From: Thalia democratica
Taxonomy: Eukaryota
NCBI GenBank assembly: GCA_965202585.1
Contig: OZ241828.1
Coordinates: 37,448,001-37,512,000 of the forward strand
Reading direction: 5' to 3'
Length of the DNA stretch: 64,000 bases
Shown here: positions 9,913 through 64,000 of the stretch, piece after piece
Position numbering within the stretch: the stretch's first letter is position 1
Layout of the letters: every line of letters begins with the position of its first letter
Notes under the pieces: model-generated
What the model was told of the DNA's origin: nothing
Databases searched by the model: none
Seen by the model: the letters and a program-made list of their open reading frames with translations, nothing else
Program-made: the position numbers and the translations under genes

Positions 9913-10158
9913 ACATTATTAAACACAAAATTCAGTTAATTTTCGTCTAGTTTTATTTTCTTTCATTTTTTATTTCGTTTAATTGATTGTTTACTACTAA
10001 AGATTTAAATATTATAATAGATATAAATAATAAAAAAACTATGATCGTAAGAAACTTTCTAAGCATGTGGTGTACGACTCGATAACTGAAAGGTTCCTTT
10101 GTACACCAGGTCCTTAGACCAAACTTTTTGAGCGCTTTTTTTATCGTTCAATAAACAA
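9913..10158 (-). repeat. Dispersed repeat family R1, long copy
   Basis: The reverse complement matches 63771-64000 over about 230 bp (e.g. GTTTGGTCTAAGGACCT.GTGTACAAAGGAACCTTTC.GTTATCGAGTCGTACACCACATGCTTA). Confidence 0.85.
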
Positions 10159-11469
10159 CATTTTAAAACTTGTAGATAAGTATTTTGAAAAGATTTTTTC
10201 ACAAATTTAGTAAGATTTAAAAACATAAATAAAACAAGTATTTTTTATGTGTCTAGAAAATTTAAACCTTTTTAAAAACTAGACGAGTTTAGATTTAAAA
10301 AAGTCAAAGTAAAGAGGTTTGAAACTACAAAAAAATTGTTGAGCATTAAGAAATTTTCGTCTATCATTGTTACTAAAAATATAGACAAGAAAAAAAAGCT
10401 TTTTAGATAACATTTTAATTTTAAAATTTAAATTTGTATAAGAAATAAAACCTACAATCATAAGTTTTACTTATAGTATCGAAGGACATAACATAATAAA
10501 CTATTTATAATATTAAAATATTTTTAACTAAATAAAAAAAACAGAAACCATGCTAAATAGCTAAAGGCTTTAAAAGCTTTTATATAGCTTAATATTAAGC
10601 ATATCTATTTTAGTAAGTTTGTTAGCTTTATATGCTATCTTTAATAATTTATAAAAATATAAACTAGAATAAACAAAATAAAACACTATTTAATCTTATT
10701 ATTAAACAATAAACCTACTATTTCTTCAACTGTTTATAAATAGTAAGACTAAGTTTCAAACTTTAATAAAGCTTTATATAATAAACAAGTATCTAATTGA
10801 CCAGAAAATAGTTCATTTGTTATTTTTTTAAACTAAAGTGTTTAAAACTTAAAAACTTTGAAAATGTTCTGTAAGTCTTTAGCGAGTGATAAAATAGAAC
10901 TTACTGGTTATAGTTAGGTTAAAATAGCATAAGTGACTTTTTCGTAGAAGTTTAAAATAATAAATGACTCTTTGCGTTGCTGATATTTCAATATTGAAAT
11001 ACACGGTTACTTTCCTACGAGTTATCTAGTAAAACTTTGGTCGTGAAATAGAGTTAAGAAGCTTGGAGTTAACCATTTATATACGAAATTGAGAACTATA
11101 CTTGCGTTAGAGGATTATAAATTATAGTTTAAAGGTAAATTCTTAATGACTAACTACTTATGGCTAATAGTTTAAGAAAAACATAAGTTAATTCACGGTC
11201 AAATACTCAGTGCAAAAAAAAACTACTCATAAAAAAGAGTACATGTTAGCACTCTATTTATAAATGACATTTAAAACAAAAATAATAGTTTGCTAAAATC
11301 TTCATGAAAAATTTTAACAAATTAAGAGTTTTTTATTTGATGAAAATCTTATTTTTTATTTTAAGAAATGTATATAAACTCCAAATATTAAATATTAAGT
11401 TCAAAGTTTAAAGTTTCGATTTAATAAATTTAGAACCACATTGCTAACTTTTTAAATTTGTCTTTAACT

Positions 11470-19112: not shown

Positions 19113-19316
19113 AAGCCACCGATTACTCAAATCTCAAGCCGAAAGCACAAATATGCAGGCGCCCTGCTGTCTATCACCCCGTTCTGGATAAAAAAGTCTC
19201 CCCTTTTCATCAAAATTGCGGGCGCCAACGTGTTGCGCGACCATTGTGTCCCCTTCTTACGTGAAAAGATTGATCGCTCCGTTGAAAATTGTGCATAACG
19301 CAAAAACGCCATTTTG
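19113..19316 (-). promoter_or_regulatory. Paralogous cis-regulatory module A (upstream copy)
   Basis: The reverse complement shares ordered blocks with 54376-54548: CAAAATGGCGTT, CGATCAATCTT, AAGGGG(A/G)CACAATGG, TGGCGCCCGCA and GGCGCCTGC. Confidence 0.7.
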
Positions 19317-24612: not shown

Positions 24613-25599
24613 GTGAGCAGTACAAAGCATTACGCGCAGGGTCGATGGCGCACAAGTTGTTTGCAAATACTCCAAACAGAACTTGTCAGAAGTGAGTTGA
24701 AGAGTCGCAGCGGATGCAGAAAAAAGTTTTCAGGGTCTTGAGAAGTTTAGTATGGTTTGTAAAAAGTTAAAAACAAAGGAAATAAGTGTGAGCTTTGGAA
24801 ATAAGGAAAAAGCGAGGGAAAAATTTTAGCTAATTAGGTTCATCGATGTGGACAAAATGTTAGGAATAAAAAAGTTAAAATAAAGTTTTAGTACAAAAGC
24901 TTTAGTAACGTTTGTTTTGGAACCGTAAGAAGCACGCTGATTTTAGGTTAAACGAATTTGAAATGACTTTTTAAGTTAACTTAAGTTTTAGATTTAGCTA
25001 ATTTGTTTAATATATAGAATATATGGTGATAGAAGTAAATTTGTATCAATAAAAGATACCATTGTTGTTTTTAGTAACATTATAACAAACGTTTGAGATT
25101 ATAAGTTTATCTTTGTGTTAGTTTAACAAATAAATTAAGCGTTTTGAAACTATAAAGTTAAAAGAGAAACAGATTTTAAAAATCATTAATGTCTGAGATA
25201 CTTTTGGTTTTGTTTATATTTTTGTTGTAAAAATTACTAAAGTATTTTATATGTGTAGTTATCTTATATTTTATAGTTACATTACTTTTTTTTTGCATCA
25301 AGTTATGCATATCGCTAATGTATATATATTGTTTTCAAAAAACTAACTACGTATGTAAATTGACATAAAGTTGTATTGTGTATTGTTTGGTAGTCCGAAC
25401 ATTACTATTCGAGATCTACACCGAATTAAGTTAACAGCCGTCTACGTAAAAAACTTTCGCATGAAAAATGTCCAAGTGACCCTTGACGATGTTTAATTGC
25501 GCGGTGCCATGTAAAAATACACCGAAAAGTAGGCGATAACAGCAACAAACGGGCTAAACCGTTTAAAACAATCAGTTTTGTAAACAGCTAATCACAAAA

Positions 25600-25800
25600 G
25601 ATTAAGTCGGACGCAGGCCAGCGCGCATTAACAGACATTGTTAGCAGGTTCATCCGATACGCGATTAAAATGCAAACAAATCACTTTTTCTTTCGCCGTT
25701 CGACGCACAAAATGGCCGCCGCCACTTAAGTATCAAGTTTCCGCGCACACCAATCAGATAAGGCGCGCACCGGGCAAGATGTGTTGAGAGAAAACAGAAT
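25600..25800 (+). promoter_or_regulatory. Proximal regulatory/promoter island of the GATA gene
   Basis: CpG-rich, with a YY1-type CAAAATGGCCGCC (25708-25720) and an overlapping CCAAT/GATA element, CCAATCAGATAAGG (about 25750-25763). Confidence 0.4.
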
Positions 25801-26032: not shown

Positions 26033-26291
26033 ATGATTCCAAGCAGGGACAACTCGAACCGCTGGTTCCAGACCAACGGGATCGGGTCCAACCACCACGT
26101 CAATGCGGACAACTCGGGCTTCTACCCCAGTAGCTATGCCAACGCGCACCTGGGCACCGGGGCGTGGGACGGGCACGGGTACCCGGGTCCGAAGATGGAC
26201 GCCAGCGTGGAAACTCTGGAGTACTTCCAGCAGATGGCAGCAGACCAGCAGAACTCGTCGTTTCCGCTCAACCCGTTTCAAATGTATCCAG
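26033..26291 (+). CDS. GATA1/2/3: GATA1/2/3-class transcription factor, coding exon 1
   Basis: GC-rich ORF MIPSRDNSNRWFQ...PFQMYP. A phase-1 donor GTTTGT at 26292 joins in frame to exon 2. Confidence 0.8.
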
Positions 26292-28506: not shown

Positions 28507-29402
28507 ATATCTTGTTACTGATAAACGCAGTAAATTGGTCAGAAATTGGGGGTAAGATATTGTTTTGACTCTGTGTTTAAGTTTGAAGATTTTTTATTTT
28601 TCATTTAGAATGTTTACAATTGCTCTTGTTTATTGAGAAAAGTTTAATTAAACAATTTCAGAAATGATTTTAACACTATGAAACAAAATTGTCCATTTAT
28701 GTACTTGATTACAGGAAAAAAAAATTACCATTGTTTTAGAACTCAACTAAAACAAAGGATACAAGTTAATGAAATATAAAAACTTTATATTGTTCATAAT
28801 TCAGAAATAACATACGTTATAAACAATATACAAAAATATATAGTTTTGACACGATAGGTTAATGCATAAGCTTATACAATATTTTTGATAAAAAGAAAGA
28901 TCTGAACAATTAGTTTAATTACCGACTTAAGTTGCTATACTTATAATACTTTTCTTTCAGTATAAGCATGTCTTTTTTAAGCTTCAAATGAGTAGTCAGC
29001 AACATAGGATTTGTGTTAATATGAAAAAATTAAATTAAAAATCGGAATTATGGCAAGATTTATACCTGGCTAAAAAAAATACTGTTTGAAAACGCAAACT
29101 CACAAAAAAGCAACATTGTGAAAGTTGTGAATTAAGAGCTAGAGACAGGTGTTTACTTAATCGCTTGCCACATGCCGCGTAAAAAACTTTGCACTTTCCT
29201 TACGACGATCAGGCCCTCAGGCTCCCAGCTAGTAGAAAAAAAAGAAACTTTCTGTTTATCTTCGCTTTGCAGCATAATTGACTCGGCTTTGTAAAGCCGC
29301 CTGATCTGGCTTTTGCTTGGCATTATACACATATACAAGAAAGGAACGAGAAATTATTTTCATAATATCGCTAACAACTTTGTTAGTTTGTTTAACACAC
29401 AT

Positions 29403-29505
29403 GCTAATTTTCATCTAATGCATGCCACCAAACGAGATTTCGGGTGGAGATAGGCGTCGCGGCAAATGTCGCTTCAATTTTACACTCTCGGTCAACACGC
29501 TGAGA
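29403..29505 (+). promoter_or_regulatory. Paralogous module C (intron-1 copy)
   Basis: Blocks GCTAATTT(T)C(A/G)TCTAATG, CACCAAA, GTGGAGATAGGC, GG(C/A)AAATG, AATTT and ACAC..GAGA recur inverted at 50640-50735. Confidence 0.65.
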
Positions 29506-30560
29506 CGGATAAAAGAGAAAGCACCAGATATGTTGTGCACCTCCACACAGCATTATGTTCAGGAGAGACATGAGTGCTGGTTTGCTTACAATATAATTCA
29601 TTAAGAGCCGAAAGACGGTGCTAGACTTTGTTTCGTTGCTGAGTCGCTAATGCGTTTTTGTTCAGCAAAGAAATTATTGATTTGCTCCGAAGACCTTTCG
29701 CATAATAGAGGCCTCTTTGCAGTTCTGGTGAAAACGCATCAGGCGAGCAAATGGTCCTTCATGCTCTAACGTATCAAGGAGCAGGAAAAAAAACTGTTAA
29801 TTTAAAATTTAGTCATGCTTTTTGTCCTGTAGAGCCTTCGTTAAAATCTGTTGCATGCAGTTTCTTAATTAAAAGCCAAATGCATGGAACTGCAGTTTAC
29901 TTCAGTTCCAAATGTCAGTCGGTTTTAAAAGAAGAGGACTACTTTTTTGTTTCAACAAGACGGAATGGAAAAGCTGTGACAGATTGTCTTTAGATAGGAA
30001 AGATAACGTCATTTAATTTCTCTTATCGACAGAAGTACTAATGCCGGGGTAACAAGTTTCATATTTCTGTAACAATAAGTAACTTACTTACTACTATGTA
30101 TTAGCAAACTAAACACACATGACATTATAGTCGTAAAAACTCTGAATTGCTTTATGTTTCTTTATACAAATGTTGAAATTTTGTACTTGCTTTAATTATA
30201 TAACGCAAACTGACCGAAACATGCACAAACAACAAAAAGAACAAACAAACTAAAACCATAAAAAGTAACATAGAAAAAATAATATTGTTAACATTAACAT
30301 TTATAAGTTAAAAAAACCTTGAAAGAAACCAGAAAAGGGTGGCGCGTGTGTGAAAAAGCTCAACGCAATAAACCTCGAATGAAACGAGAACGCGTGAGTG
30401 TTTTAATTAAGACTTCCCTTTTGTACACAAAGCTGTTGAGCCCGAATCAATCGTTTCAGATCAAAGCGGCTCGGCCCTGAAACCAGCCAGTTGTTTATTT
30501 TCGTTTCTGCGCACAGTCATCGCTTTCTAAGGTGACTAAGTCGCTTGCTGCAGCTCTAAA

Positions 30561-30729
30561 TTGAAGCGATTGGTCACACCGAAAGTCGTTAGGCGAAAGA
30601 CTCTCATCGAAAATTAACTCGTTAGCCAAATCACCTCTCGTTTCTTAATAAAGGTGGGCATGAAATGTTTGAGCGAAAAAGCCATTGAAGTTCTTCATCA
30701 CCTTTCAATTTGTCAATTTGTGTAAACAA
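30561..30729 (+). promoter_or_regulatory. Paralogous module B (intron-1 copy), 169-bp near-identical core
   Basis: 165/169 nt identical to the reverse complement of 50193-50361. Contains GATTGG (CCAAT) and a Fox-type TGTAAACAA. Confidence 0.9.
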
Positions 30730-30883
30730 ACAGATTGCTGGCTTAGCGCTTATCTAATTAAATAGTCATGAGAATCGGCACTTGATGCTGTAGCTGATGA
30801 AAGTTTTAATCATAAAACAGATTTAGCTTGAAGATTACCGTAACATGACAGCCAGATTGAAATCTATTCTGTTTTATCCTCTC

Positions 30884-30916
30884 TATATAAAAAAGTTGTG
30901 CTTTCGCTTGTCAGTT
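30884..30916 (+). promoter_or_regulatory. Candidate internal TATA-Inr core promoter in GATA intron 1
   Basis: TATATAAA starts at 30884 and TCAGTT has its A at 30913, a spacing of 29 nt (canonical). Confidence 0.45.
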
Positions 30917-31266
30917 ACTTGCACGAGAACCAATACACACCTTAAGTATTTAAATTGCTTTAATGACGAGCTTTAAGGTGTAAAAAGCAATTTTAGTTTT
31001 TCAATACATTGTAAACCCGTTATTATTATTTTAAATTCTTTTTTCACATTGTTTTTTTTAAATATATTCATGCTGAGTACTTAAAACACTGCTTATTGCT
31101 ATTTAGAGTAAAATTCTTAAAACCGAAGTTAGTAACTCAGAAAAAAAGGAAAACAGAAACCTGTTAAGAACTTAATTTATAAATTTTTTACAAGTCTTCA
31201 TTATCTAGTAATATAATTATCTTATGAGTAAATAAACTGAATTAAAAACCAATACTTTTTTTTCAG

Positions 31267-32049
31267 CACGGAGGCTGCACCACCAAGTCCACTCGCACGC
31301 CACCTCGCCAGCCGCCAACCCGGGGCTTTCCCTTTTCTCGTCGTCGGCCAAAAACGGCGTTTTCCACCCGCACCTGCCCGCGGCCGCCCACCACCAGTTC
31401 AACGCCAACCACTCGTGGACCAACAAGCACCGGGGGCTGTACGACTTCAACCTGCCCACTTCCGCCCAGCAGCAGCAGGTCAAGGTCGAGACCACTTCCT
31501 CCGTCTCGTCCAAGTCGGACACGAGCGTGGCGGCGTGCAAGCCCCAAGCGCAAGAGGGGGACACGACCGCGGCGGCGGCGGAAAAGTCAGCGTTCGGGGA
31601 AATAACCAGCTGCGAGAACGGCGCGTCGCAGCAGCTCACCTCCGAGCAGCAGCAGATGACCTTTCACTTCCCGACGCCCCCGAACGAGGACGGGGAAGTC
31701 CCTTCAGCCAACTCGACCCTCGCCCAGCAGGAGAAGGCCGCCAAGCCGCAGGCGTCCAACGAGCCCAACATCATACTCAACGGCGCCTCTATTACGTCAT
31801 ACAACGACCAGGAGTTGGCGGGCAGCAACAAGCTTTCAACCTACCCTTCCGGAGGGACCAACGGAGAGAGCAAGAGCAGCATGAGCTCGGGGCCGACGGC
31901 TTACAGCAGCGCGATGCACACGCAGAGCTTCGCGCAGCAGCAGCAGGACATCAACGAGGTGGCGAAGTACGCGGCTTCCGCCAACAGCCTGTCGACGAGC
32001 CAGTACAGCAACAGCACTCTGGCGAAGAAGAAGAGCAGAACTAACGCGT
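31267..32049 (+). CDS. GATA1/2/3: GATA1/2/3-class transcription factor, coding exon 2
   Basis: Acceptor TTTTTTTTCAG (31266). The 783-nt open frame includes TFHFPTPP (compare the GATA2/3 FTFPPTPP motif) and ends KKKSRTNA. Donor GTGAGT at 32050. Confidence 0.92.
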
Positions 32050-32467: not shown

Positions 32468-32610
32468 CCCGCGAGTGCATCAACTGCGGGGCGACCACCA
32501 CGCCGCTGTGGCGCAGGGACGGGACCGGGCACTACCTGTGCAACGCGTGCGGTCTCTACCACAAGATGAACGGGCAGAACAGACCGCTGGTCAAGCCGAA
32601 GAAGCGGCTT
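32468..32610 (+). CDS. GATA1/2/3: GATA N-terminal zinc-finger exon
   Basis: [47 protein letters not shown]. Acceptor AACAG (32467), donor GTGAGT (32611). Confidence 0.97.
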
Positions 32611-32827: not shown

Positions 32828-32953
32828 TCGGCTGCGAGGAGGGCGGGCACCAGCTGCAGCAACTGCTCCACCACCCATACGACGCTGTGGAGGCGCAACT
32901 CGAGCGGCGACCCGGTGTGCAACGCGTGCGGACTTTACTTCAAGCTTCACGGG
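32828..32953 (+). CDS. GATA1/2/3: GATA C-terminal zinc-finger exon
   Basis: [42 protein letters not shown]. It is 126 nt and phase 0-0, as in vertebrate GATA2/3. The linker SAARRAGT is GATA1/2/3-type. Confidence 0.97.
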
Positions 32954-34537: not shown

Positions 34538-34903
34538 GTGAACAGGCCGCTGACGATGAAGAAGGACGGCATCCAGACGAGGAACAGGAAGATCAGCACC
34601 AAGATCAAGAAGTCCGGGGTGTGCAGGGACGCGAGGTACGACCAGACGTTCAGGTTCCTCGACAACCCCACCGGCTTCGCCAACCTGCAGTCCTACTCCC
34701 AGTCGTTCAACCCGATGCAGTTCAACCCGCACCAGCACCAGCTGGGCCACCAGGGCTTCGGCCACCACGTCAACCACCACTCCATGTTCCCGCCGCCCGG
34801 CCACCACGTCGGCCACCCGGGCATGACACCCGCGCACGCCCACCACACGTCCAACACGCTGGCGCTGGGAATCGGGGCGCACTCCGGCATGGCGATCGGG
34901 TGA
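34538..34903 (+). CDS. GATA1/2/3: GATA basic tail and His/Gln-rich C-terminal exon (to in-frame TGA; or to 34899 if spliced)
   Basis: Acceptor TTAACAG (34537). Reads VNRPLTMKKDGIQTRNRKISTKIKK...GMAIG*. The TGA at 34901-34903 lies inside a GTGAGT donor at 34900. Confidence 0.93.
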   Translation: MNRPLTMKKDGIQTRNRKISTKIKKSGVCRDARYDQTFRFLDNPTGFANLQSYSQSFNPMQFNPHQHQLGHQGFGHHVNHHSMFPPPGHHVGHPGMTPAHAHHTSNTLALGIGAHSGMAIG

Positions 34904-42931: not shown

Positions 42932-43012
42932 TTGTTTATTGAACGACAAAAAAGCGCTCAAAAAGTTTGGTTTAAGGACCTTGACTACAAAAAAAAGCTT
43001 TCGGTTATCGAG
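42932..43012 (+). repeat. Dispersed repeat family R1, fragment
   Basis: TTGTTTATTGAACGACAAAAAAGCGCTCAAAAAGTTTGGTTTAAGGACC...TTCGGTTATCGAG matches the reverse complement of the 10.1-kb copy. Confidence 0.75.
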
Positions 43013-45660: not shown

Positions 45661-48483
45661 GTCGTTAGCTAGACTGCTTTCGGATGTCTTGGCCGGTCAC
45701 CCCTGCTTGTTTCATCTCTTGAATCCGTCAAAAAAAAAATCGAGTAAAAATTTTAAACTCGATGACAACTCGTTTGATCGGCTGACTTCTTGCTGAGGCT
45801 CACAACAAACAATCGTGAAATCGTCGAGCGTCTGACGACACCAAGCGGATAGAAAAAAAGTTTTTCATTCTGTTTTTTTAGAAAACACAAAAAAGAAACA
45901 GGTTCGTTTATTCTTATGGATAATGTTTAAATAAGTTTATAAAATTTCAAAAATTAACAATATAAAATGAATTGAACTTGTAACAGGTATTTAAGTAATT
46001 TCGTACAAATGTTGCGTAATTTGTCTCCTTAAACGCATGAGTTTTTACTTATTTTTTTGCAAGTATTACATAACATTAAACATTAAAAATTTTTTCTATT
46101 AAATATACATCTTCTTTAAGTTTTGTATAGTTATATAATGAATTTTTTTTTACTAAGTTGATTTTAGTAAAATTTAAATAAATAAAAAACTAAAACACAA
46201 TTTTTTATTTTATTTTTACTTTATACTTATAATACCTAAAATATAGTTCTGTATATAAAAACTTCAAACTCTTATCTTAAGTATGGTTTAAAAAATTATA
46301 TTCTAAACACTTTTGTAAAGTCTTTCTAGTACTTTTTAACAACCAGCCAACAAAATAAAAGTTCATTTCGTTTGCAATAATTTTTAAGATATACAAATTC
46401 ACTGCAAAAATATTTTTATATAGTTTAATTGGCTTTAAACTATAAAAAAGTACTTTTTAAAAAATAATAAAAGGTTGTAACAGTACAAGTTGTTTTTAAA
46501 ATTAAAAAATATTCAATTAGTTTAAAATAAACTAATATTTGTAGATATTGTTATCAAAATATCATTTCTATTAAAAAAAATCAGTCGAAAGTACCCATTA
46601 TAAATATTTTTAATGATCGAAGAGATCACCATTTTAGACAACTATTTATGCGTTTACACTACTACATTGCTGAAGCTTCAGTACTTTGAAAACTGTTTGA
46701 AAACCCGAATGAACTTGTATGAATGAAGCTTGAGAATTGTAATCTGATATATTTGATAAACTTAAACGGAAGCTGGTATTGTAATACGGTTCCAAATTAT
46801 GTCATTTGGTTTGTATTTTGCTTTGTTAAATGATCATAACTGCTACAACTACTTCATTCATAAATGTCATTTAAGCTGAAAATGTACCAGAAACAGATAC
46901 TTTATTTTGAGTTAAATGACAAGCTAAGTTTTTAATCAAAAAAAAAAAAACTTTTATTATTTTTACAATATTAAGTGTAAGTTTTTAAACATTGGCAAAT
47001 GTCATTTAAATTGAAAGCAAACTGTTTACTATAATTTGCCTAATTATTTAGTACTTCTAATATTGAAAAAAAGTCTTAACTTTTTTTTTCTCTATTACTT
47101 AAAGTACATTATAAAAGTATAGAAAGAAACTTTATAAAGTGTAAATGCTAAAAAAACATTTGTTTCAACTTTTAAACAAGTTCATTATATTTATTTTAAA
47201 GAAAACCGATGATCATACTTTTAAAATCATAAATCAAACTCGTTATCCAATTAAATTTTTCGAAAATTTTAATATAAGCAAATATTTTGAAGTTGTACTG
47301 AATAAGTTTAGAATTATCTTTTTAAGTTTAAAATTTTGTAACCTCTTTTAACTTTTCTTCAGTTGTTAGTACTTAATAAGTAAACTTCGACATTAAAACG
47401 GTTTTATTCAACATAAAAAACAAAACTAAAATTGAACACCCTTCTCTTTACATTTCCCTATTAAAACTGAATTGTTTTTATTCTAATATATGTTTCAATT
47501 AGTTTTTTTAAGCTAACTTGTAGTTTTAAAAGAAGCCTATGAAATTGACAAAGCTACTTAAAAGCTCTCATTTTAAAACTTTTTTAGTTAGTAACTGCTT
47601 TTACATTTAATGATTTCAAACTATGTTAGCTAGACTTCGTTTTGACACTTTAGATAGTCTTTATTTTTAAATTTTTTGTACTTTAAAATGTTGAATGTAT
47701 GATATACAAAATTAATACTTAAATTCATACTGAAATTAAATTTAATTTTACAATAAATTTATGAAAAAAACTGACGTTTTTTAATTAATATTTATTTAAA
47801 ACTACATTTTAATGAAAACATTGATTTGATTATTAAAATATTAATTTAGTAACAAGCTTTTAAAGCGTTTTTTTAAATTTAGCTTCTTAAAATCTATTAA
47901 ATTTATAAGTTTTGAGTTTAAATAAGCACTAGTTTATGAAAGAAACTTTACTAATATTGTTCACCATCAAAACTTATTTCATAACGAACCTGGTCAAAAT
48001 TACTACTCGTTTATCTTTATTTAGATATATTAAATTTACATAGAATAGTATCTGCATATTTTGTATAGCTTTATTGTAGTCAAGTTTTACAAAAAGTGCT
48101 GAGTATTAACAAAAATTTAGTTGATTTAATAGTAATAATAACTAACATTATAATACATTATATAAAAAAAATTATATAAATTAAATACAATTTAATAGTA
48201 CTACATTTTTGTTGTTTAAAGTCTTAAAAAACTGAATAAAGTCAATGTTTTGAGCATGCGTAAAAATTTTTTAAATTCAAAATGTTACATTTTTGCTTTC
48301 TATATAAATGTTAAAATCTACCTCAGTATTTATATATTTTTTCAAACGTATATTAATTGTTTTGTCGATTAGCTTTTCACAAAATACTTACTTGTACAAA
48401 ATATTTTCACTTTAAAAAAAACTAACTTTTTTTTTATAAATAGTATACAGAAGTGTATTTAAATGTTTTCAATAATAAATACA

Positions 48484-49053
48484 TTACTAAAAATATATAA
48501 CAGAGTGCATTTCATTTTGTTTAAATTTGTTTAAGTACTTTCAAATAGGACTCGTCAGAAATTGTTTCCTACTGGATTGCAATGAATACAAATTAAAATA
48601 AAATTATACTACAGTTTAAAGTTTTAAGATATAAAATGACGTAATAATCAAAAGTTTAAAATTAAATAAGTTCTAATGCTAAACAAATTTGGTATACTAA
48701 TAAAACTCGGTAGAATTAAAACATTCTAAATAAAGAAGCGATAAAAAATTTTTAAATTAAAACTATGCTTAAAAATAATAAATAAAATTTTTTTATCGCT
48801 TCTTTAATTAGAATGTTTTAATTCTACCGAGTTTTATTAGTATACCAAATTTGTTTAGCATTAGAACTTATTTAATTTTAAACTTTTGATTATTACGTCA
48901 TTTTATATCTTAAAACTTTAAACTGTAGTATAATTTTATTTCAATTTGTATTCATTGCAATCCAGTAGGAAACAATTTCTGACGAGTCCTATTTGAAAGT
49001 ACTTAAATAAATTTAAACAAAATGAAATGCACTCTGTTATATATTTTTAGTAA
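48484..49053. repeat. 570-bp near-perfect palindrome (fold-back); possibly a TA-flanked MITE
   Basis: Left arm 48484-48753 and right arm 48784-49053 with a 30-nt spacer and about 4 differences by eye. Reads TA|CTAAAAAT...ATTTTTAG|TA at the ends. Confidence 0.92.
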
Positions 49054-50192
49054 GTTATGCACCGGAAAAAAGCTGTTCAAATAAATACATTATAAGACGT
49101 TTTGTTTCGTAAACTTGTGAATATATGTTATTTGCATCATACTTTATCGGTTATATATACAAAAGTTTAACACTTAATTTATACTAATATTTTTTTTTTT
49201 GATTATAAAGCTAAATTATTTTTAAATAAAATGGAAATCAAGCCAAAACATAAAGTTACAAAGATCAAGTTTAACAAAAGTTATACACTGTTCTAACAAA
49301 ACTTTATAAATTTCATACACTCAGTAAAGCTGCTTTAACATAATTTCAAAGATAAATTATCAGCTATTGATATATTAAAGGATGTAATTGCTTAACTTTC
49401 GGATGTTTGACAGCACCATTTTATTCAGGTGAGATGTTTATTTTACTTCGAATAGTTTTGTTATTTAAATCCTTTAAGTTAAAAAGCTAACAACTTTGTT
49501 TGCTTTGTATTAGCAACGTATTAATACGTGCTATTGTTCAGTTTGTTACTTGAACCTAGTAAAGATAGGTTTATTCGTGCTTTTGCCTCGAGTTAATTTG
49601 ATTTTTATTGTGAAACTACTTTAACCAAGTTTAAATTTATTTCTTTATAACAGGTAATTTACTAGCTGATTGCTTTTAGTGCACGATTTAATTTAGTTTT
49701 CACCGTAATTAGACTGCAAACATCAAAGTTATCAAGCTGAAAACGCATGTATTTATATTAAAGCAATAAACCCATTGCAAACTTTATGTGGACTAAATAT
49801 GCAAAAGGTATTAAAAGTCAACATTAAAAGCACTTAACGTTCGGTGTGCTTTGAATTTGTTAATGTTAATCTTCCGACTCAATATACAGCCGCGCGCCGA
49901 GATAACACAGTGATCGCATTTGATAACGAAACATGTTAGCATTAAATTTAATAAATATACACACAAATGTGTATCAGAAACGCACATGTTTTATTGAAAC
50001 ACATCAAGCTCATCATTTCACCCTGCTAAGCAAGTTATCGAAAGCAGATATTGTTCCGATGCGAATCTAATCTTCTTCATCTTTTTTATTGCTGAGATCA
50101 AAGCGATGGTGAGATGCTGTGATTAAAAGCTTAATCGCGGGAGGGGATCTCGAATAAAAACACAGTTTCGCCGGACTTCTGAAACATTTTGC

Positions 50193-50361
50193 TTGTTTAC
50201 ACAAATTGACAAATTGAAAGGTGATGAAGAACTTCAATGGCTTTTTTGCTCAAACATTTCATGCCCACCTTTAATAAGAAAAGAGAGGTGATTTGGCTAA
50301 CGAGTTAATTTTCGATGAGAGTCTTTCGCCTAACGACTTGCGGTGTGACCAATCGCTTCAA
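50193..50361 (-). promoter_or_regulatory. Paralogous module B' (downstream inverted copy)
   Basis: The reverse complement is 165/169 identical to 30561-30729. Confidence 0.9.
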
Positions 50362-50639
50362 GTGTTGTGTACACGAGTTGTAGAATCAAAACAAAACAAA
50401 GAAAAAAATGTGTGCTTTTGAACAAGCTTTTTAAATCCTGTCAAAATTATATTAAGCTTACATCAAAGTTTATACGCAAAAGCTAAAGTTAAGTTTCTTA
50501 GTTTCATTTTTAAAAATACACAAGAAAATTTACAAAAGCAAATTTGCTTTAATTGTTTGTTTATTAAATAGTATTTAATGTTTCATGTATATATATATAT
50601 ATTCGTCTCGCTATACTATGATTTCTCATATTGTTCGTT

Positions 50640-50735
50640 TCTCTGTGTGAATAGGAACATTAAATTCAAAAGCCATTTTCCATAATGCCTATCTCCACTG
50701 GTATCTTTTGGTGAAAATCATTAGACGAAATTAGC
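50640..50735 (-). promoter_or_regulatory. Paralogous module C' (downstream inverted copy)
   Basis: Ordered block match to 29403-29505, including GCCTATCTCCAC (50687-50698), the reverse complement of 29444-29455. Confidence 0.65.
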
Positions 50736-50971
50736 CGACGTGTAAAAATAAATAACACGGTTTTTATCAATAACATTGAAATGATACGCTTATTTATTCT
50801 GCCGTGAGTGTTCAGCGGTCGACAAATGCGCTGCAGAACGGATATTTTTAGAAGCCTGTGGCCTCAGAATAAACAAATTTAAATGTTAGCGGTACGAATA
50901 ACATGCACAGAAATTACCTATAACCGTTCGATTTTTTCTTCCCAGATTAGCAACTGAACTTCATTCTTAAG

Positions 50972-51080: not shown

Positions 51081-54000
51081 TTAAGAAATAACTTTTGTTG
51101 CTTTATTTATAGACGTGAATATTTTTGGTATCAAGTTATTTAATTTGAGTATATCATGATTGTTTTATTGCCATTAGAAAGTACTTTGCTAAAATTATAA
51201 ATACTCTGCATAAAAAACTGAAAAAAAAATTGAAAACTTTGTTTTATAAAGTTTAAGAAATTTATCTATAGCTTAAAGTTATTATAGTTTGTTATTAAAT
51301 TGTTTTAATGTTAAAATAATGACTTCAACGTATTTTTGTTTTTTACAAACTGTTTTAAATATAATCTTGTATAGTTTTTAAATTTGTTTTCAAACATAAT
51401 CTTTGCAGATTAGTATGCTTAACTAAAAGCGTTAATCGTTTGAAGTGAAAAGAACAGTTTAATTGATCTAAACAACAGTATAATGAATCATCGCTTTTCA
51501 AATAAATCCTGTTAATTGCTACGATAAACTTTATTAGTAATGACATCTTAAGTCAAACATTAAAACAAAACAGATTAAAGTAGAAGCTATTTATAATATC
51601 CTGTTGATGAATAGAACTTATATAAAAATAAAAGTATAATAAGCTTTGTAAATACAAATTTATCTTTAAAACTAGATTCGTTTTTACAGTGGCTTATTGC
51701 TAACGTTAAGTCGGGTCAATTTTTATTATGTATTGTTTGTTATTTGTTGTCTGTTTTAATAAGTAAAAAATTATTACTTATCAAAAAAATATTTAACGTA
51801 TACGTTGATTTGTACATACAATTTAAAAAAAAACTGAAACTGTTTAAAAAAAGTAGCTTAAACAAAAAAAATCTTTTTTATTATGAATAAGTAGAAAATT
51901 AAAGTCAAATAAGTTCACCTTTATTTCGACTGTTATACCTTAAAGTTAGTTTGAATTTTTAGTTAATTTATTATTCAAAACTATGTTAAAATCTTAAAAC
52001 TAGTTTTAAAACCAGTAAATTTACAATATTAGTACTTTTATGACTTGTTCTAGATTTATTTAAAATATTTGTTCACCAATATTTAAAATAAAATATTTCA
52101 ATAGAGACTTTAATATCTAATACAATAGCAAAGAATTTTGTTAAATAATTTATACACTTAGTAGAAACAGTTAAAAACGAATATTAGTTTACTTTTTCAG
52201 TGCAAAAATGTTTCAAAAACAAAAACAAAACTAAGATGTTCTATAACATGGCTTTCTTTAAAAATATCTCTGTTAAGATATTTTAAGTTAAATTTTAAAA
52301 GTTTGAAAAGTATTTTATTTTTTCACAACTACTTTAAACTTATTTTTGAAAACTTATAGATCCTTCCAACTATAAGCTCGATGTGATCTTATCAAAAAGG
52401 TTTTTGTGTGTTTAGTTGTCATAGCGGCTACTTAAAAGCGAACATTTGCTATCGCATCGCAAAACTGATTTTTTAAACTTAAATTACAATTTCTAACAAG
52501 CGTTGAACAGGCGGATTCGAACTTTTATAATTAAACAATTATTTTGTTGCTTTGGTAGTTGTTTTTTATGTAAAATTCTTTGTGATAGAAAAGTTTAAAA
52601 ACGGTTTTTTACCTACATATTTTTTAAAGTTTATGTAATTTGTTTGTTATTATGTCAATTTGTTTTTAACAGATGTTAATTAAATTTTATAAATTAATTA
52701 AAAATTTGAAAACTTTACTTTTTTTATTATTAAACATTATTAATATTTTTTTGTTAGTTTCAATTGTCACTTTTTATTTTGCATTACTTTTTGTTTAAAC
52801 ATTTATTTTATTGCACTTATACGTAACATTTTGTTATCTAAAACAGTCTATATAATTTTTTTTTTGAATTTTAACTTAAAACCTTTACTTTTAAGACGAA
52901 CTTTTATACTTTAATCTAAAAGTAATAACATTTTTATCTTGCTAAAACATTTATAGTTTAGCGTTTGATAAATACAATTCAACGTATATAAAACTTAAGT
53001 CACAGTTTGTAAGTTATAATTTTAAGTAAACTAGCTTTTAAACACTTGTTTTTTTATCCTCATTTTTACATAACTTTTTATAAAGACTATACAAAACTGT
53101 TTATTTTAGTTTTTGTAGTTTTAGTAAAAGAACATGCGGTTTCTTAATTATACTAATACTTCTATTGTTTTTATGGCTTCAGTTAATGAAACAAGTCATT
53201 TGTAATCTTTTACATGATATTTTAATTTAAAAAAAAGTTTAAGGGTAAAACTACTTTTTTTTTTCATTTAGCTGTAATACAAAAGAATTAAGTATTTTTT
53301 AATTAAACTTTTTAACTTAAAAAAAACTACACAAAAAACAACAAAAAATTAACACACTTTTAAACGTAAAGTTTTTTAATAGGATATATATATATATAAA
53401 GCCTAAAGTCATACTCATATAGTTTTTACAATTTCTCAGCTAAAGATTAAAATCTCGTTTTGTTAAAGCTACTTTAAAAATTATAATTATAATATCTTAA
53501 AACACAATATATATATATATAAAATAAGGTTAATGTTCAAACTTAAACACCTTCTACTGAGCCCACTTGAAGGGCTTTTAAATAATTTATTGAAATGGCG
53601 ATTTTAAAAATCCTGGTACATATGTTTCATAAAGCTTTAATTTTTTATAAAGCTTTAATCATCAGCCAGTTATATATATATATATGTACATACATATACA
53701 AAAATAACAGAAATTCTTCGGTATCGTAATCAGCTCTTAAAACTTAAAACAAAATTCTTTAAAAAAACTGTTAAATCTTCTATTAAAGTTATAAAAAATA
53801 AAACTTTTAGTCTTTATATTAACGTTCTAGCTACTTTATTTATAAGTTGTAAATACTAAAGACCAGTGTAAGTAAAGATTTGTAGTGTTATTGAATAATA
53901 ATAGTAATAAAAAAGAATTAAGTAAAAATTTATATCCACTTATTTTATGCGATACTTTTTTATAATTGATGTTCTTGATATATTGATTTGAAGTTGTTCA

Positions 54001-54375: not shown

Positions 54376-54548
54376 CAAAATGGCGTTACACGATTTGCTC
54401 AAGAAACTCTCGCGGGACGATCAATCTTCACAAGTGAAAAGGGGGCACAATGGACCAACAAAAACTGGCGCCCGCATTTTCATGCCTGAAAATTTCGACA
54501 GACAAAAAGGCGCCTGCGCACCCGCTGAGTTGTGAGCAACGAGTGGTT
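54376..54548 (+). promoter_or_regulatory. Paralogous module A' (downstream copy, inverted relative to A)
   Basis: Blocks at 54376-87, 54418-28, 54439-53, 54466-76 and 54509-17 match the reverse complements of 19305-16, 19266-76, 19241-55, 19217-27 and 19155-63. Confidence 0.7.
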
Positions 54549-55081
54549 TTTATATTAGATTGATTTCAAATTTATTTGGTATTAAAAAAAGTGTTAAACG
54601 CGGAGTCTTGCGTATTTTTTTAAATCTTCTTAGCGTCTAATGAACGTATCAATTAGTACAGCTTTTCATTGGGATATTGACAAAAAAATATAGTAAGAAA
54701 AACTCTGTTGATATTTTAGTTTTTTTTTTAAGCACATTAAACAAATTAAAAAAAAAACAGTGTTCTTCATAAATATTATTAAACGTTTTATTTAAATTTG
54801 CCAGTGTGAGCTGAATAGTTGGTAACTTTTGTTGTATATGTACTTAATAAAAGGTACTGAAGTATCTCAAGAATCTAATATATTTTATTTTTGTTTTTTA
54901 AGGTGACTTAGAAGGATTTTACGTTTATTCTTCGTTAAACACCACTTAAGATCTTACAAAGTCATTTAGTTCTATTGAATTAAGACGAAAAAATGTAGTA
55001 TTTTTAAAGGTTTTTCTTTTATTATAATAAAAACTATTGTTTATTAAACGATAACAGTAAGCGCTTAAAATACTTGGTCAT

Positions 55082-55117
55082 GGGACTTGGTGTACAAAAG
55101 AACCTTTCAGTTATCGA
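55082..55117 (+). repeat. Dispersed repeat family R1, short core fragment
   Basis: GGTGTACAAAAGAACCTTTCAGTTATCGA matches the R1 core. Confidence 0.6.
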
Positions 55118-60763: not shown

Positions 60764-62710
60764 GACTTTAACGAATCTTTCCATTCGATCATGAAACCTA
60801 ATTGTTTTATTCATCTCGCAAACGAGCCTCTTCTCCACTACTCCCTGAACGTGTTGCTTCGCAGCGGCGTTGAAAAAATCATCATCGCGTGCAAGCAGCG
60901 ATCGAGCGAAGAAGTGGTGGAGTATTTGCAGAGCCGCAAAAAGTGGGCTCATAAGTACAAGTGCGGCGAAATAAAGGTGATTCCCCTCAATGACGACGTG
61001 AGCAGCGTCGGCGACGTGTTCAGGGAACTGGACGACGTCGTCACGGATGACTTCAAATTCATCCCGTTCGATGTCGTGTCGAGCGCCGATTTATCGAAAG
61101 CTGATGAGGAGGAGTCATCCCGTTGACAAGACCGCTCCCATGTTGACGGTGGTTCTGACGGACGGCGTCGGCACCGAGCACGAGCTTCGGCAGTTGGAAG
61201 ACGACGTCATAGTCGTTTACGACTCTGCATATTTCACGCTGCGTTATTTCAACAAGACCAAGTGTGAGAGGAAGCACTCCATGCCGATGTGCCGATGTCC
61301 TTCGTGCGGGGCTCAGCGTGAACTATCGAGTTCTTGATCCCGGCGTCTGGGTTTGCTCCAAGGAAGTCATCGAAGTTTTCAACGACAACTTTGACTTTGA
61401 CACCCAAGACGTTTTTATCAAAAACGTGATAGAGCTGTTTGAGTTTCTGGGCAAGGAGGTTCACGTTCACCTGCTGCGCTCCGGTTACTGCTGCAAAGTG
61501 ATCAACTTGACGAGGCACCGCGTGGTTCAACGTGACGTCATAAACAGAAAACTGTGCCCGCTTTTACCTGAAAACCTCCCAGCGTCAACGAGTGAAGGAG
61601 GGTACGAGGTTGGCGCGAAAGGAAATTACTTGCACAGCACCTGTCAGCTCTCGTCTGCTGTGAAGGGGAAAACTTTCACGATTGGACCTAACACAAAGAT
61701 TGGGAGTTCCGTGACTGTAAACGAATCGGCAGTGGGTAGCAATTGCATTTTGAGCAGCGGTTGCGTCGTTGAAAATTCAACGCTGCTGGGCAATGTGAAG
61801 GTTGGTGAAAAAAGCTTGGACTATTAACTCCTTCGACGTCGAGATAGGAAGCAACGTCATAATTGACAACTGCTTAATATGCTCAGGGGTGAAAATATCA
61901 GACGACGTTAAAGTTCCTCAGAACAGCATAATTGTGTATTACTTAGGTAAAAATTCAAAAGTACTAGTTGAAAAGGACATTTCTTACGTTGGAAAAAACG
62001 GCCTAGGCATGCATTACTCCTTGAATTCTGACATATTTTGTGAAGATATTTTAGCACTGGAAAACACTACCGACATGACCAACAAGCTCTGGGGTATCTC
62101 CATTGACAACGCGAATTATGTGTCAGAGGATGAAAACGAGAGCACTTCTTCGGATGAGGACTTGATGCTCGACTCTGACGAATTCAAAAGAGAGGTCGAG
62201 GAGACGGTTGCGAGACTCGTCGAGGAGCCCAACGTGGAAACGACGAACCTCGTACGGGAAATCAACGCTTCGAGGCTCAGCTACAACGCGCCGTGGAGAA
62301 AAGTGACGAACGCGGTGGTCACTTGCGTCATGGAGCGTTTCGTCGATGAGCTGCGAGCTGGAGGCGCGTCGAGGAAAACGGCGTTTGACGGAGTGGCGGA
62401 GTTGTACGGGGGGCTGCTTAGAGAGTACGTCGCGGAAGAGGAAGAAGAGGCGCTTTCGGCGCTGACCGCCTACTCGATGCGCAACGAGACTTTCATGGGA
62501 GCGCTTTCAGTCGCGCTCAACTCCTTGCTCTTGCGAGACATCGTCCAGCCGGAGTCCATTGTTCAATGGTACGAAGAAAACCCGGCCCATCGGCGAGGAG
62601 CTGTTACCGAGACCAGATGCGGAAGATCAGAGAGTTACAATCTTGTTACAATGTCTAAACTTTTAAGTTGCTTTTGCTTCAAAATTTTAGCCAGTGTTGT
62701 TATCTACTAA
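60764..62710 (+). pseudogene. EIF2B5: Intronless, N-terminally incomplete, frameshifted translation initiation factor eIF2B epsilon homolog (probable retrocopy; sequencing errors not excluded)
   Basis: Four overlapping ORFs (60791, 61047, 61264, 61802) cover in order the nucleotidyltransferase-like domain (LANEPLLHYSL, SVGDVFRELD, FNDNFDF), the left-handed beta-helix (IGPNTKIGS, VGSNCIL, IGSNVII), the acidic linker (KLWGISID..SEDENES) and the W2/HEAT domain (FKREVEETV, LVREINASRLSYN, DIVQPESIVQWY). Homology extends upstream to DFNESF at 60764. Confidence 0.8.
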
Positions 62711-62828: not shown

Positions 62829-63454
62829 GGGAACGGTACTAAATAACACGAGAACAAAATTACACGAAAGCTCCAAATTGCACAAAGATACTTTTGCACG
62901 AAGACAAATTCGCACTAGGGCACAAAAATGAACGAGAGAATAAAATTGCACGAAGACGATTTTACACCGAGGGCCAATTTTGCACGAGTTACATTTTTGC
63001 ACGAGGGTAAAAAAAATACAGAAAAAAAAGCACTAAAAGATAAAAAAGTTACTGACCGAAGGTAACAATTAAGGGTACCAACTAACAGTGATAGTAAAAA
63101 TAAATAACTAATAAAATATAATATTAAAAAAGAACACTAAGAGAAAAAAAACTAAGAAAAAACTACCGACCGACCGAGGGTAAGGGTTAGAGATAACAGT
63201 GATAGTAAAAAAAAATAATAAAAAAAGAATAAAAAAGAAAAACTACCGACCGAGAGTAAGGGTTAGTGGTAAGAGTGCAAGTAAAAAAAAATTCAACCCG
63301 TGCAAAAATGTCTCCGCGCAAAATCGTCTGCTCGTGCAAAAGTATCTTCGTGCAATTTTATCCACGTGTAATTTTATCCCCTCGTGCAAAATTGTCGTCG
63401 TGCAAAAGTATCTTCGTGCAATTTTGTACGCTCGTGCAAATTTGACAGCTACCC
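62829..63454. mobile_element. Non-autonomous Mutator-like (MULE/foldback) element, 626 bp, with a perfect 9-bp TSD
   Basis: ACTAAAACT directly repeated at 62820-28 and 63455-63. Termini are GGG...CCC. About 9 subterminal TTGCACGA-type units on the left and about 9 inverted TCGTGCAA units on the right. The A-rich core carries repeated CTACCGACCGAG.GTAAGGGTTAG. Confidence 0.85.
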
Positions 63455-63770
63455 ACTAAAACTATCTGCAAATTTGACTAACATCCGTTAATTTTTTTTT
63501 AGTAAAAAACGATAATTCGTTATTTTTAAGTGTTAGCCAAGAGTTAAATGACTGCTTAAAATACTTTCTACATGACTTGAATATTTTTTAGTTTTTTTAT
63601 TTATTTACGCTGACTAATTCATTGAGCGAGAACAATTATTAAAGAAACAGTTTTTTGAGAAAATGTAAAATATAGTATAGATAAATGACTAGAAAAACAT
63701 ATTACTTTAGTTTTAATTAATTATTTACTAACTTGTATTTAAATTATAGAAAGCAACTTGTATTGAATTA

Positions 63771-64000
63771 TTGTTTATTGAACGATAAAAGTTTGGTCTA
63801 AGGACCTAGTGTACAAAGGAACCTTTCGGTTATCGAGTCGTACACCACATGCTTATAAAGTTTCTTACGAGCTATTACACATAGTTTTTTCATCTTTTTA
63901 ATATTTAGATCTTTAGTTATGAACAATCAATTAAACGAAAAGAAAAATGAAAAAAATTAAAACTAGACGAAAATTAACTGTATTTTGTGTTTAAAAATGT
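63771..64000 (+). repeat. Dispersed repeat family R1, long copy running to the window edge
   Basis: Matches the reverse complement of 9913-10158. Confidence 0.85.

What the first reader, a model, noticed from the sequence alone, without database searches (positions are those of the whole stretch)
30561..30729. Module B/B': 169-bp core 165/169 identical inside flanks that are barely alignable
Seen: only 4 substitutions and no indels versus the reverse complement of 50193-50361. Identity drops abruptly at both ends, yet the inner flanks remain faintly homologous (GAT.AA..TTTTAATCA.A, GAAGATTA, TGCTTTCG..ACTTGC). Inference: the core is far more similar than the rest of the duplication, implying recent gene conversion between the inverted arms or ultraconservation-level selection. 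It carries CCAAT and Fox-type (TGTAAACAA) motifs and lies about 155 bp upstream of a TATA-Inr.
Basis: partly seen in the sequence, partly recalled or inferred. Interest (0 to 1): 0.75.

Follow-up and report, generated by a model that had tools for sequence, protein, structure and literature searches.

The report
Twin noncoding islands in GATA locus
A 169-base non-coding stretch in the first intron of a GATA transcription-factor gene has a 98%-identical mirror copy 19 kb away; the pair is real and unique in the genome, and is most likely a regulatory island recently overwritten by gene conversion inside a much older inverted duplication, which is a known kind of event.

Summary
The core observation holds. 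30561-30729 equals the reverse complement of 50193-50361 at 165/169 positions with no indels, and identity collapses at both edges. These are the only two copies in the 802-Mb genome, and both sit in unique sequence. It is therefore not a MITE. The core has stops in all six frames, no Rfam or tRNA match, and no unusual RNA fold.

The window holds one five-exon GATA1/2/3-type gene of 558 aa. Copy B lies inside its intron 1, 537 bp before exon 2. Copy B' lies 15.3 kb past the stop codon.

The "faint" homology claimed for the immediate flanks is at chance level. Two other blocks, X/X' (66%) and A/A' (71%), are significant and nest around B/B' in mirror order. That points to an old inverted duplication of non-coding islands.

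B and B' differ by 2.4%, about 2-3 times the difference between individuals (about 1%). At least one SNP lies inside the core.

My best reading is recent gene conversion of a paralogous regulatory island (about 0.5). The rivals are a recent 172-bp secondary duplication and selection alone.

No RNA data or orthologous B sequence could be obtained. Earlier notes of this scan report other inverted duplications in this genome.

The parts
30561..30729 (+). Core B (match extends weakly to 30737). Non-coding, 38% G+C, 8 CpG. Inside intron 1 of the GATA gene, 4269 nt after the exon-1 donor and 537 nt before exon 2.
50193..50361 (-). Core B', inverted copy, 165/169 identical to B. Lies 15,289 nt downstream of the GATA stop codon, in AT-rich sequence that is unique in the genome.
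29353..29523 (+). Block X (intron 1), homologous to X' at 66%. Keeps an identical 12-mer GTGGAGATAGGC containing a WGATAR site.
50619..50785 (-). Block X', inverted partner of X, 257 bp outside B'.
19208..19316 (+). Block A, 6.7 kb upstream of the ATG exon, homologous to A' at 71% as several G+C-rich motif blocks in the same order.
54376..54484 (-). Block A', inverted partner of A, the outermost block of the right arm.
26033..26291 (+). GATA exon 1 (ATG, ends in phase 1, donor GTTTGT). The ORF is 90% identical in a related species and diverges right after the donor.
31267..32049 (+). GATA exon 2 (phase 1 to phase 1). 87% identical in DNA to a related species' contig that stops aligning 19 nt before the acceptor.
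32468..32610 (+). GATA exon 3, N-terminal zinc finger.
32828..32953 (+). GATA exon 4, C-terminal zinc finger.
34538..34903 (+). GATA exon 5, basic tail and C-terminus, stop codon at 34901-34903.
30884..30916 (+). TATA-like box (30884) and Inr-like TCAGTT (30911), 154 bp right of B. Present beside B only. A possible internal promoter, untested.

Best explanation
B and B' are the innermost pair of three non-coding islands (A, X, B and B', X', A'). These islands survive from an ancient inverted duplication of the 5' regulatory part of a GATA1/2/3-type gene. No trace of a second gene copy is left. The islands are most likely cis-regulatory modules that act on the one remaining gene: B from within intron 1, and B' from 15 kb downstream. 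A/A' and X/X' have drifted to 66-71% identity. B/B' was recently homogenised by non-reciprocal exchange (intrachromosomal gene conversion between inverted repeats). The tract ends sharply because nothing alignable lies beyond the island to carry a heteroduplex further. Constraint on the island probably kept the copies similar enough for conversion to continue. Shown: the match, the copy number, the non-coding nature, the gene model, the mirror order of the three blocks, the absence of flank homology, and the scale of B-B' divergence against polymorphism. Inferred: conversion as the mechanism and enhancer function.
For: The match is 165/169 with no indels and has exactly two copies in the genome. 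Flanks of both copies are unique in the genome. X/X' and A/A' score 48 and 37 against GC-matched control maxima of 19 and 16. They are the only long-range non-repeat BLAST matches in the window (E = 4.5e-5 each). Both are inverted and nest concentrically around B/B'. B' lies only 257 bp from X', in the expected order and orientation. No homology exists in any spacer between the blocks. No relic of GATA exons exists elsewhere in the window. B-B' divergence is 2.4%, against 0.4-1.2% between individuals in the adjoining DNA (table 8). Presumably neutral DNA differs by about 25% from the nearest related species, and the best non-coding island there is 96% identical. The exchange is therefore far younger than the arms. 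The locus is dense in G+C-rich non-coding islands around a developmental transcription factor gene. Earlier notes of this scan and my own 200-kb sample show that inverted and direct local duplications are common in this genome.
Against: No orthologous B or B' sequence could be obtained, so the defining signature of conversion (paralogues closer than orthologues) is untested. Conversion between islands that had already drifted to about 70% would be very inefficient, so the model needs continuous homogenisation or help from selection. There are no expression, chromatin or reporter data, so enhancer function rests only on location and composition. B sits at the edge of a larger G+C-rich island (30326-30740), whereas B' stands alone in AT-rich DNA. 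That pattern also fits a one-way recent copy.
Confidence: 0.5

Rival explanations
1. Recent small secondary duplication. A 172-177-bp piece of the intron-1 island was copied in inverted orientation 19.4 kb away, for example by template switching or a templated insertion during repair. It is unrelated to the older A/X duplication, drifts neutrally, and has no function of its own.
For: The immediate flanks show no homology at all. Divergence is only about 2-3 times polymorphism. B is part of a larger G+C-rich island while B' is an isolated fragment in AT-rich DNA. Local duplications of a few hundred bp to a few kb, direct and inverted, are frequent nearby: at least six in 200 kb.
Against: The copy would have landed by chance 257 bp from X', on the correct side and in the correct orientation to continue the mirror order A-X-B | B'-X'-A'. 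That is roughly a 1% coincidence for a landing site within +/-40 kb (my estimate). There is no target-site duplication and no telling microhomology at the junctions. The nearby duplicates seen are mostly larger or much closer together.
Confidence: 0.17
2. Selection alone. Both copies are an ultraconserved duplicated enhancer. Nearly every base is constrained, and the sequence has stayed unchanged since the ancient duplication without any exchange.
For: The element lies in a developmental transcription factor locus rich in conserved non-coding islands. One of these islands is 92-96% identical across species where neutral DNA is about 75%. The edges are sharp and there are no indels over 169 bp.
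Against: The sister blocks of the same duplication are only 66-71% identical. Everything else between the arms is unalignable, so 97.6% would demand constraint far beyond the best island measured at this locus. A SNP inside the core is fixed in one individual's contig (30566 G>A). All four best-holding DNA runs carry only 7 of 12 sampled words of the core, which suggests ordinary polymorphism inside it.
Confidence: 0.12
3. A transcribed element: a small RNA gene, or an alternative first exon or promoter module used on both strands of the locus, conserved for its RNA or promoter function.
For: A TATA+Inr-like pair lies 154 bp right of B, and only four such pairs occur in the window. Another pair lies on the minus strand at 51248/51221, upstream of X' and B'.
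Against: There is no Rfam match at gathering score or at E <= 1 and no tRNA-like gene. Fold energies are ordinary on both strands (z = +0.5 and -0.75). The TATA-Inr is not conserved beside B'. Stops occur in all six frames. No RNA run on record holds the core's words. This last point is weak evidence, because low-level and small RNAs are easily missed.
Confidence: 0.05
4. Assembly artefact: one of the copies does not exist in the animal.
For: None directly.
Against: The two copies differ at four positions and sit in different unique flanks. Contigs of two other individuals cross both junctions of B (records 22, 23, 29). Summed depth over the core bin is about 2.5-3 times that of the neighbouring bins in both runs (table 2), as expected for a second copy.
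Confidence: 0.02

Closest known systems
Interlocus (ectopic) gene conversion between inverted paralogous segments, for example arm-to-arm conversion in sex-chromosome palindromes or the inverted Hsp70 gene pair of Drosophila (from my own knowledge, not checked in papers here)
   Same: Two inverted copies on one chromosome. A short tract is far more alike than the surrounding paralogous DNA, its borders are sharp, and its divergence is of the order of within-species diversity.
   Different: The homogenised tract here is a 169-bp non-coding island rather than a gene or a whole arm, and the rest of the arms has decayed beyond alignment. The phylogenetic proof of conversion is missing.
Duplicated conserved non-coding elements (dCNEs) around paralogous developmental regulators in vertebrates (from my own knowledge; the paper searches gave nothing closer)
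   Same: Short non-coding islands kept in several copies in the landscape of a developmental transcription factor. They stay in conserved order while the spacers diverge. A/A' and X/X' look like typical dCNEs.
   Different: Known dCNEs usually lie beside two surviving paralogous genes and are about 70-90% alike. Here only one gene survives, both arms flank it in mirror image, and one pair is 97.6% alike.
Ultraconserved elements
   Same: A run of more than 150 bp of near identity without indels, next to a developmental gene.
   Different: Ultraconservation is defined across species, which could not be tested here. The evidence available (a SNP inside the core and the far lower identity of the sister blocks) argues against it.
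MITEs and other short non-autonomous transposons
   Same: Similar size (about 170 bp), with high identity between copies.
   Different: Only two copies in 802 Mb, with no terminal inverted repeats and no target-site duplication. For contrast, a true young repeat sits 1.1 kb away with more than 1000 candidate copies.
Redundant ('shadow') enhancers
   Same: Two similar non-coding modules at different distances from a single developmental gene, one intronic and one distal.
   Different: Shadow enhancers share binding-site content but are rarely near-identical in sequence. Activity of B and B' is untested.

Membership tests
MITE / short transposon | Many dispersed genomic copies | tested here: not met
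   Whole-genome search at E <= 10 finds exactly two places, B and B'. Searches with 1.7-2.2 kb around each copy find only the partner core.
MITE / short transposon | Terminal inverted repeats and a target-site duplication | tested here: not met
   The core ends TTGAAGCG... and ...GTAAACAA are not complementary beyond 3 nt. The bases flanking each copy are not duplicated.
Structured non-coding RNA gene (Rfam families, tRNA-like) | Match to a covariance model, or a fold more stable than shuffled sequence | tested here: not met
   No Rfam match at gathering score or at E <= 1. No ARAGORN gene. Fold z-scores are +0.52 and -0.75.
Coding exon | An open frame through the conserved stretch, with splice sites at its borders | tested here: not met
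   The longest ORF touching the core is 44 aa and every frame has a stop inside it. There is no AG before the core in either copy.
Interlocus gene conversion tract | Lies within an older paralogous (duplicated) context | tested here: met
   X/X' and A/A' are significant, inverted and collinear with B/B'.
Interlocus gene conversion tract | Tract identity far above that of the neighbouring paralogous sequence, with abrupt borders | tested here: met
   97.6% against 66-71% for the other blocks, with chance-level flanks.
Interlocus gene conversion tract | Paralogues within a species closer to each other than to their orthologues in related species | not testable with these tools
   The related species' contigs found (L003-L006, L027, L028) are 1.0-1.3 kb long and do not reach B. 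Two JGI metagenome scans with core 28-mers found nothing.
Ultraconserved / conserved non-coding element | Conservation across species well above neutral | not testable with these tools
   No orthologous sequence of the core was obtained. Only neighbouring parts of the locus could be compared.
Ultraconserved / conserved non-coding element | Reduced polymorphism within the species | tested here: inconclusive
   One listed SNP lies in the core (30566 G>A in X2), and the best DNA runs hold only 7 of 12 sampled words. This hints at ordinary diversity, but the sample is tiny and the contigs are fragmentary.
Promoter-proximal module | A fixed position upstream of a used transcription start, kept in both copies | tested here: not met
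   The TATA (30884) and Inr (30911) exist beside B only; the aligned position beside B' has neither. B lies inside intron 1 of the gene. Whether the start is used could not be tested, because no RNA run was available.

The most novel reading that the evidence does not exclude
B and B' could act as a recombination substrate that flips the 19.4-kb segment between them. That segment carries the TATA-Inr, exons 2-5 and the downstream islands. Because the flanks are mirror images (A-X-core on the left, core-X'-A' on the right), either orientation puts the same order of islands in front of exons 2-5. Only one orientation joins them to exon 1. An inversion polymorphism would then switch between a full-length GATA product and an N-terminally truncated or null one. 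One metagenome contig joins B's own left flank and the core to 67 nt that do not fit B's right flank (X1 record 6). This is compatible with such a recombinant junction. It is equally well explained as a chimeric low-depth assembly path through the 54 nt that the two copies share.
Probability: 0.04. Interest if true: 0.8.

Novelty: new member of a known kind. Interest (0 to 1): 0.35.

Why it matters
The pair is a clean, small and well-delimited candidate for a duplicated enhancer of a GATA1/2/3-type gene, in an animal group with few characterised regulatory elements. It shows how a short non-coding island can stay nearly identical inside an inverted duplication that has otherwise decayed beyond alignment. 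It also gives a directly testable contrast between conversion, selection and recent copying: four sequences from two species would decide. Practically, two 98%-identical inverted repeats, one inside intron 1 and one beyond the gene, are a substrate for an inversion that would break the gene. They are also a trap for short-read assembly. Beyond that, the finding is an ordinary instance of known processes.

Tried and rejected
- **Transposon (MITE):** rejected by copy number (two) and by the lack of TIR and TSD.
- **Structured RNA or tRNA-like element:** rejected by Rfam, ARAGORN and fold z-scores.
- **Coding exon or micro-ORF:** all frames are closed, and the only substitution that falls in the 22-codon plus-strand ORF is non-synonymous.
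- **Second GATA gene or exon relics in the right arm:** none found by zinc-finger pattern or tblastn. The apparent similarity of 33.0 kb to 45.55 kb was checked and is not real.
- **Faint homology of the immediate flanks:** at chance level.
- **Other mirror blocks:** an all-against-all Smith-Waterman scan of the window added none. It also showed that AT-rich simple sequence alone scores 35-45, so the significance of A and X rests on the GC-matched controls and the dust-filtered BLAST.
- **Cross-species copies of the core:**
  - two JGI metagenome scans with 28-mers gave no match;
  - exact look-ups of 16 short ORFs around B, X, B' and X' found none in the protein collection;
  - relatives found through exons 1 and 2 sit on contigs too short to reach B.
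- **Expression:** no RNA run holds the core. The runs laid were all DNA contigs, and X17, labelled as organism B, holds nothing of the locus.
- **Paper searches:** none turned up a closer precedent.

Full report
**The observation**

Window 30561-30729 and the reverse complement of 50193-50361 are identical at 165 of 169 positions, with no indel. The four substitutions are at core offsets 22, 80, 88 and 115. BLAST and the repeat finder extend the match weakly to 172-177 nt. The 40 bases outside either edge are unrelated. Against the whole 802-Mb assembly the two places score E = 1e-81 and 3e-76, and nothing else matches even at E <= 10. Searches with 1.7-2.2 kb around each copy return only the partner core, so both copies sit in unique DNA.

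**What the core is not**

- **Not a transposon.** It has two copies, no terminal inverted repeat and no target-site duplication. A real young repeat 1.1 kb from B' gives more than 1000 candidates in the same kind of search.
- **Not a known or obviously structured RNA.** There is no Rfam match at gathering score or at E <= 1 and no tRNA-like gene. Fold energies are ordinary on both strands.
- **Not coding.** Every frame is closed within the core, and the longest ORF touching it is 44 aa.

**Gene context**

The window holds a single GATA gene on the + strand. Two GATA zinc fingers are encoded at 32468-32610 and 32828-32953. The closest solved structures are GATA-3, GATA-1 and GATA-2.

A five-exon model has GT-AG introns throughout and translates to 558 aa without internal stops:

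| Exon | Coordinates |
|---|---|
| 1 | 26033-26291 |
| 2 | 31267-32049 |
| 3 | 32468-32610 |
| 4 | 32828-32953 |
| 5 | 34538-34903 |

Exon 1 is supported by phase: it ends in phase 1, as exon 2 requires. It is also supported by an ORF from a related species that is 90% identical up to the predicted donor and diverges immediately after it. The related species' exon-2 contig stops aligning 19 nt before the predicted acceptor.

B therefore lies inside intron 1, 4269 nt after the donor and 537 nt before exon 2. B' lies 15,289 nt beyond the stop codon.

Such pairs are rare, with four in the window on both strands. They have no counterpart beside B'. An exon starting there could not join exon 2 in frame from its own ATG. 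It may be an internal promoter, but this is untested.

**The flanks and the wider mirror structure**

Local and semi-global alignment scores of 100-1270 bp on either side of the cores lie at the mean of GC-matched controls. The best case has z = 1.5, with 7% of controls as good.

Two other blocks are clearly homologous:

- X 29353-29523 against X' 50785-50619: 66% identity, score 48 against a control maximum of 19.
- A 19208-19316 against A' 54484-54376: 71% identity, score 37 against a control maximum of 16.

In a dust-filtered BLAST of the window against itself, these are the only long-range matches that are not repeats (E = 4.5e-5 each). Both are inverted and nest concentrically around B/B', giving the order A, X, B | B', X', A'. 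B' is only 257 bp from X'.

A caveat applies. An all-against-all scan shows that AT-rich simple sequence alone reaches raw scores of 35-45. The significance of A and X therefore rests on their G+C-rich composition, the matched controls and their collinearity.

No spacer between the blocks is alignable. No relic of GATA exons exists anywhere else in the window. The genome has GATA fingers at only two other places, on other contigs.

The simplest history is an old inverted duplication of the 5' part of the locus, or of a whole gene whose second copy has vanished. Only constrained non-coding islands remain recognisable from it.

**How old is the B/B' identity?**

Contigs of two other individuals (runs X2 and X4, DNA) differ from the window by 0.4-1.2% in the adjoining DNA (table 8). 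They cross both junctions of B (records 22, 23, 29). Summed depth over the core bin is 2.5-3 times that of the neighbouring bins, as expected if a second copy exists (table 2).

B and B' differ by 2.4%, about 2-3 times the difference between individuals. For scale, the related species differs by about 25% in presumably neutral DNA upstream of exon 1 and by 7-8% in exon 1. It differs by 4-8% in the best conserved non-coding island of the locus, 25440-25639. The arms of the mirror structure are far older than that species split, since nothing neutral aligns between them. The core's identity is far younger than the split.

A SNP inside the core is present at full depth in one individual (30566 G>A). 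All four best DNA holders, from three studies, carry only 7 of 12 sampled words of the core. This suggests ordinary polymorphism inside it.

**Weighing the explanations**

- **Selection alone** would need constraint well beyond the best island measured here, and it sits badly with polymorphism in the core. I give it about 0.12.
- **A recent independent 172-bp duplication** explains the absent flank homology and the isolation of B' in AT-rich DNA. Local duplications are also common nearby: at least six in 200 kb, including a perfect 1012-nt palindrome. But the copy would have had to land by chance next to X', on the correct side and in the correct orientation. I estimate that as roughly a 1% coincidence. 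I give this reading about 0.17.
- **Gene conversion** of an already paralogous island explains both the position and the identity. It probably needed constraint that kept the copies similar enough to pair. I give it about 0.5.

Conversion and selection are not exclusive. The function of the islands as enhancers of the GATA gene is inferred only from their location, their G+C-rich composition and the density of such islands in the locus.

**What could not be done**

No RNA run holds the core, and the runs I could lay were all DNA contigs. Transcription of either copy is therefore unknown.

No orthologous copy of the core could be reached:

- The related species' contigs are 1.0-1.3 kb long.
- Two metagenome scans were blank.
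- Sixteen exact ORF look-ups were blank.

One observation stays unexplained. A 245-nt contig from a marine metagenome (X1 record 6, depth 3.6) carries 9 nt of B's own left flank and the whole core. It then continues for 67 nt that do not fit B's right flank, although another contig of the same run fits 30828-30978 perfectly. This is either a chimeric assembly path through the 54 nt that the two copies share, or a real recombinant junction from an inversion of the 30.7-50.2 kb segment. I could not lay reads a second time.

**Comparison with what is known**

The pair behaves like a short interlocus gene-conversion tract between inverted paralogous segments. Its sister blocks look like duplicated conserved non-coding elements of a developmental regulator. 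Both comparisons rest on my own knowledge, since the paper searches found no closer precedent. The unusual points are that the arms flank a single surviving gene in mirror image, that one copy lies inside intron 1, and that the homogenised tract is a 169-bp non-coding island.

Earlier notes of this scan describe the same mirror landscape on this window. They also describe other inverted duplications elsewhere in this genome, one of them with exons kept nearly identical while introns drifted. They call the animal a pelagic tunicate, which I did not test. In my data the relatives and the run holders come from marine metagenomes.

**Verdict**

This is a real and tidy feature, a new member of a known kind. 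Its interest is moderate to low unless the inversion reading or cross-species ultraconservation turns out to be true.

Noticed in passing
window 29353-29523 and 50619-50785: Blocks X and X' keep an identical 12-mer, GTGGAGATAGGC, which contains a WGATAR site, while the surrounding block is only 66% identical. This may be a GATA autoregulatory site kept in both arms.
   Followed up: partly
window 25440-25639 (compared with L027:400-600): The non-coding island just upstream of the ATG exon is 92-96% identical to a related species' contig. Neighbouring non-coding DNA is about 75% and the exon itself 92-93%. It is a strong conserved element or a 5' UTR.
   Followed up: partly
window 48479-49058: An inverted dimer (276-nt arms, 98% complementary, 28-nt spacer) of a roughly 295-bp repeat. 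The repeat has more than 1000 candidate copies at 96-98% identity across the genome, so it is a young transposon. It lies 1.1 kb from B'.
   Followed up: partly
window 9913-10169, 42932-43012, 55031-55117, 63760-64000: A second dispersed repeat family (82-87% between copies) occurs in both orientations. It accounts for the other long inverted matches in the window.
   Followed up: no
window 60791-62710: eIF2B-epsilon-like ORFs (NTP transferase, LbH_EIF2B / hexapeptide and W2 domains) lie in three different overlapping frames without obvious introns. They may have very short introns or be a decayed retrocopy.
   Followed up: partly
window 51221-51248, minus strand: A TATA+Inr-like pair, one of only four in the window, lies on the minus strand upstream of X' and B'. 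It mirrors the direction in which the GATA pre-mRNA runs through X and B.
   Followed up: no
L016:4631-5642; L012-L014; L023; L025/L026 (G000:C4, 37.61-37.90 Mb): The 200 kb sampled to the right of the window holds a perfect 1012-nt palindrome and at least five other local direct or inverted duplications (91-98% identical, 0.36-4.2 kb). Local duplication is frequent in this genome.
   Followed up: no
window 30552-30729 (run X1, record 6): A metagenome contig joins B's left flank and the core to 67 nt that do not fit B's right flank. It is either a chimeric low-depth path or an inversion junction.
   Followed up: no
window 63299-63459 and 62855-63003: A tandem array of a 16-18-nt unit (CGTGCAAAA-type, 7 copies) has an inverted partner array 430 nt away, just downstream of the eIF2B-epsilon-like ORFs.
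   Followed up: no
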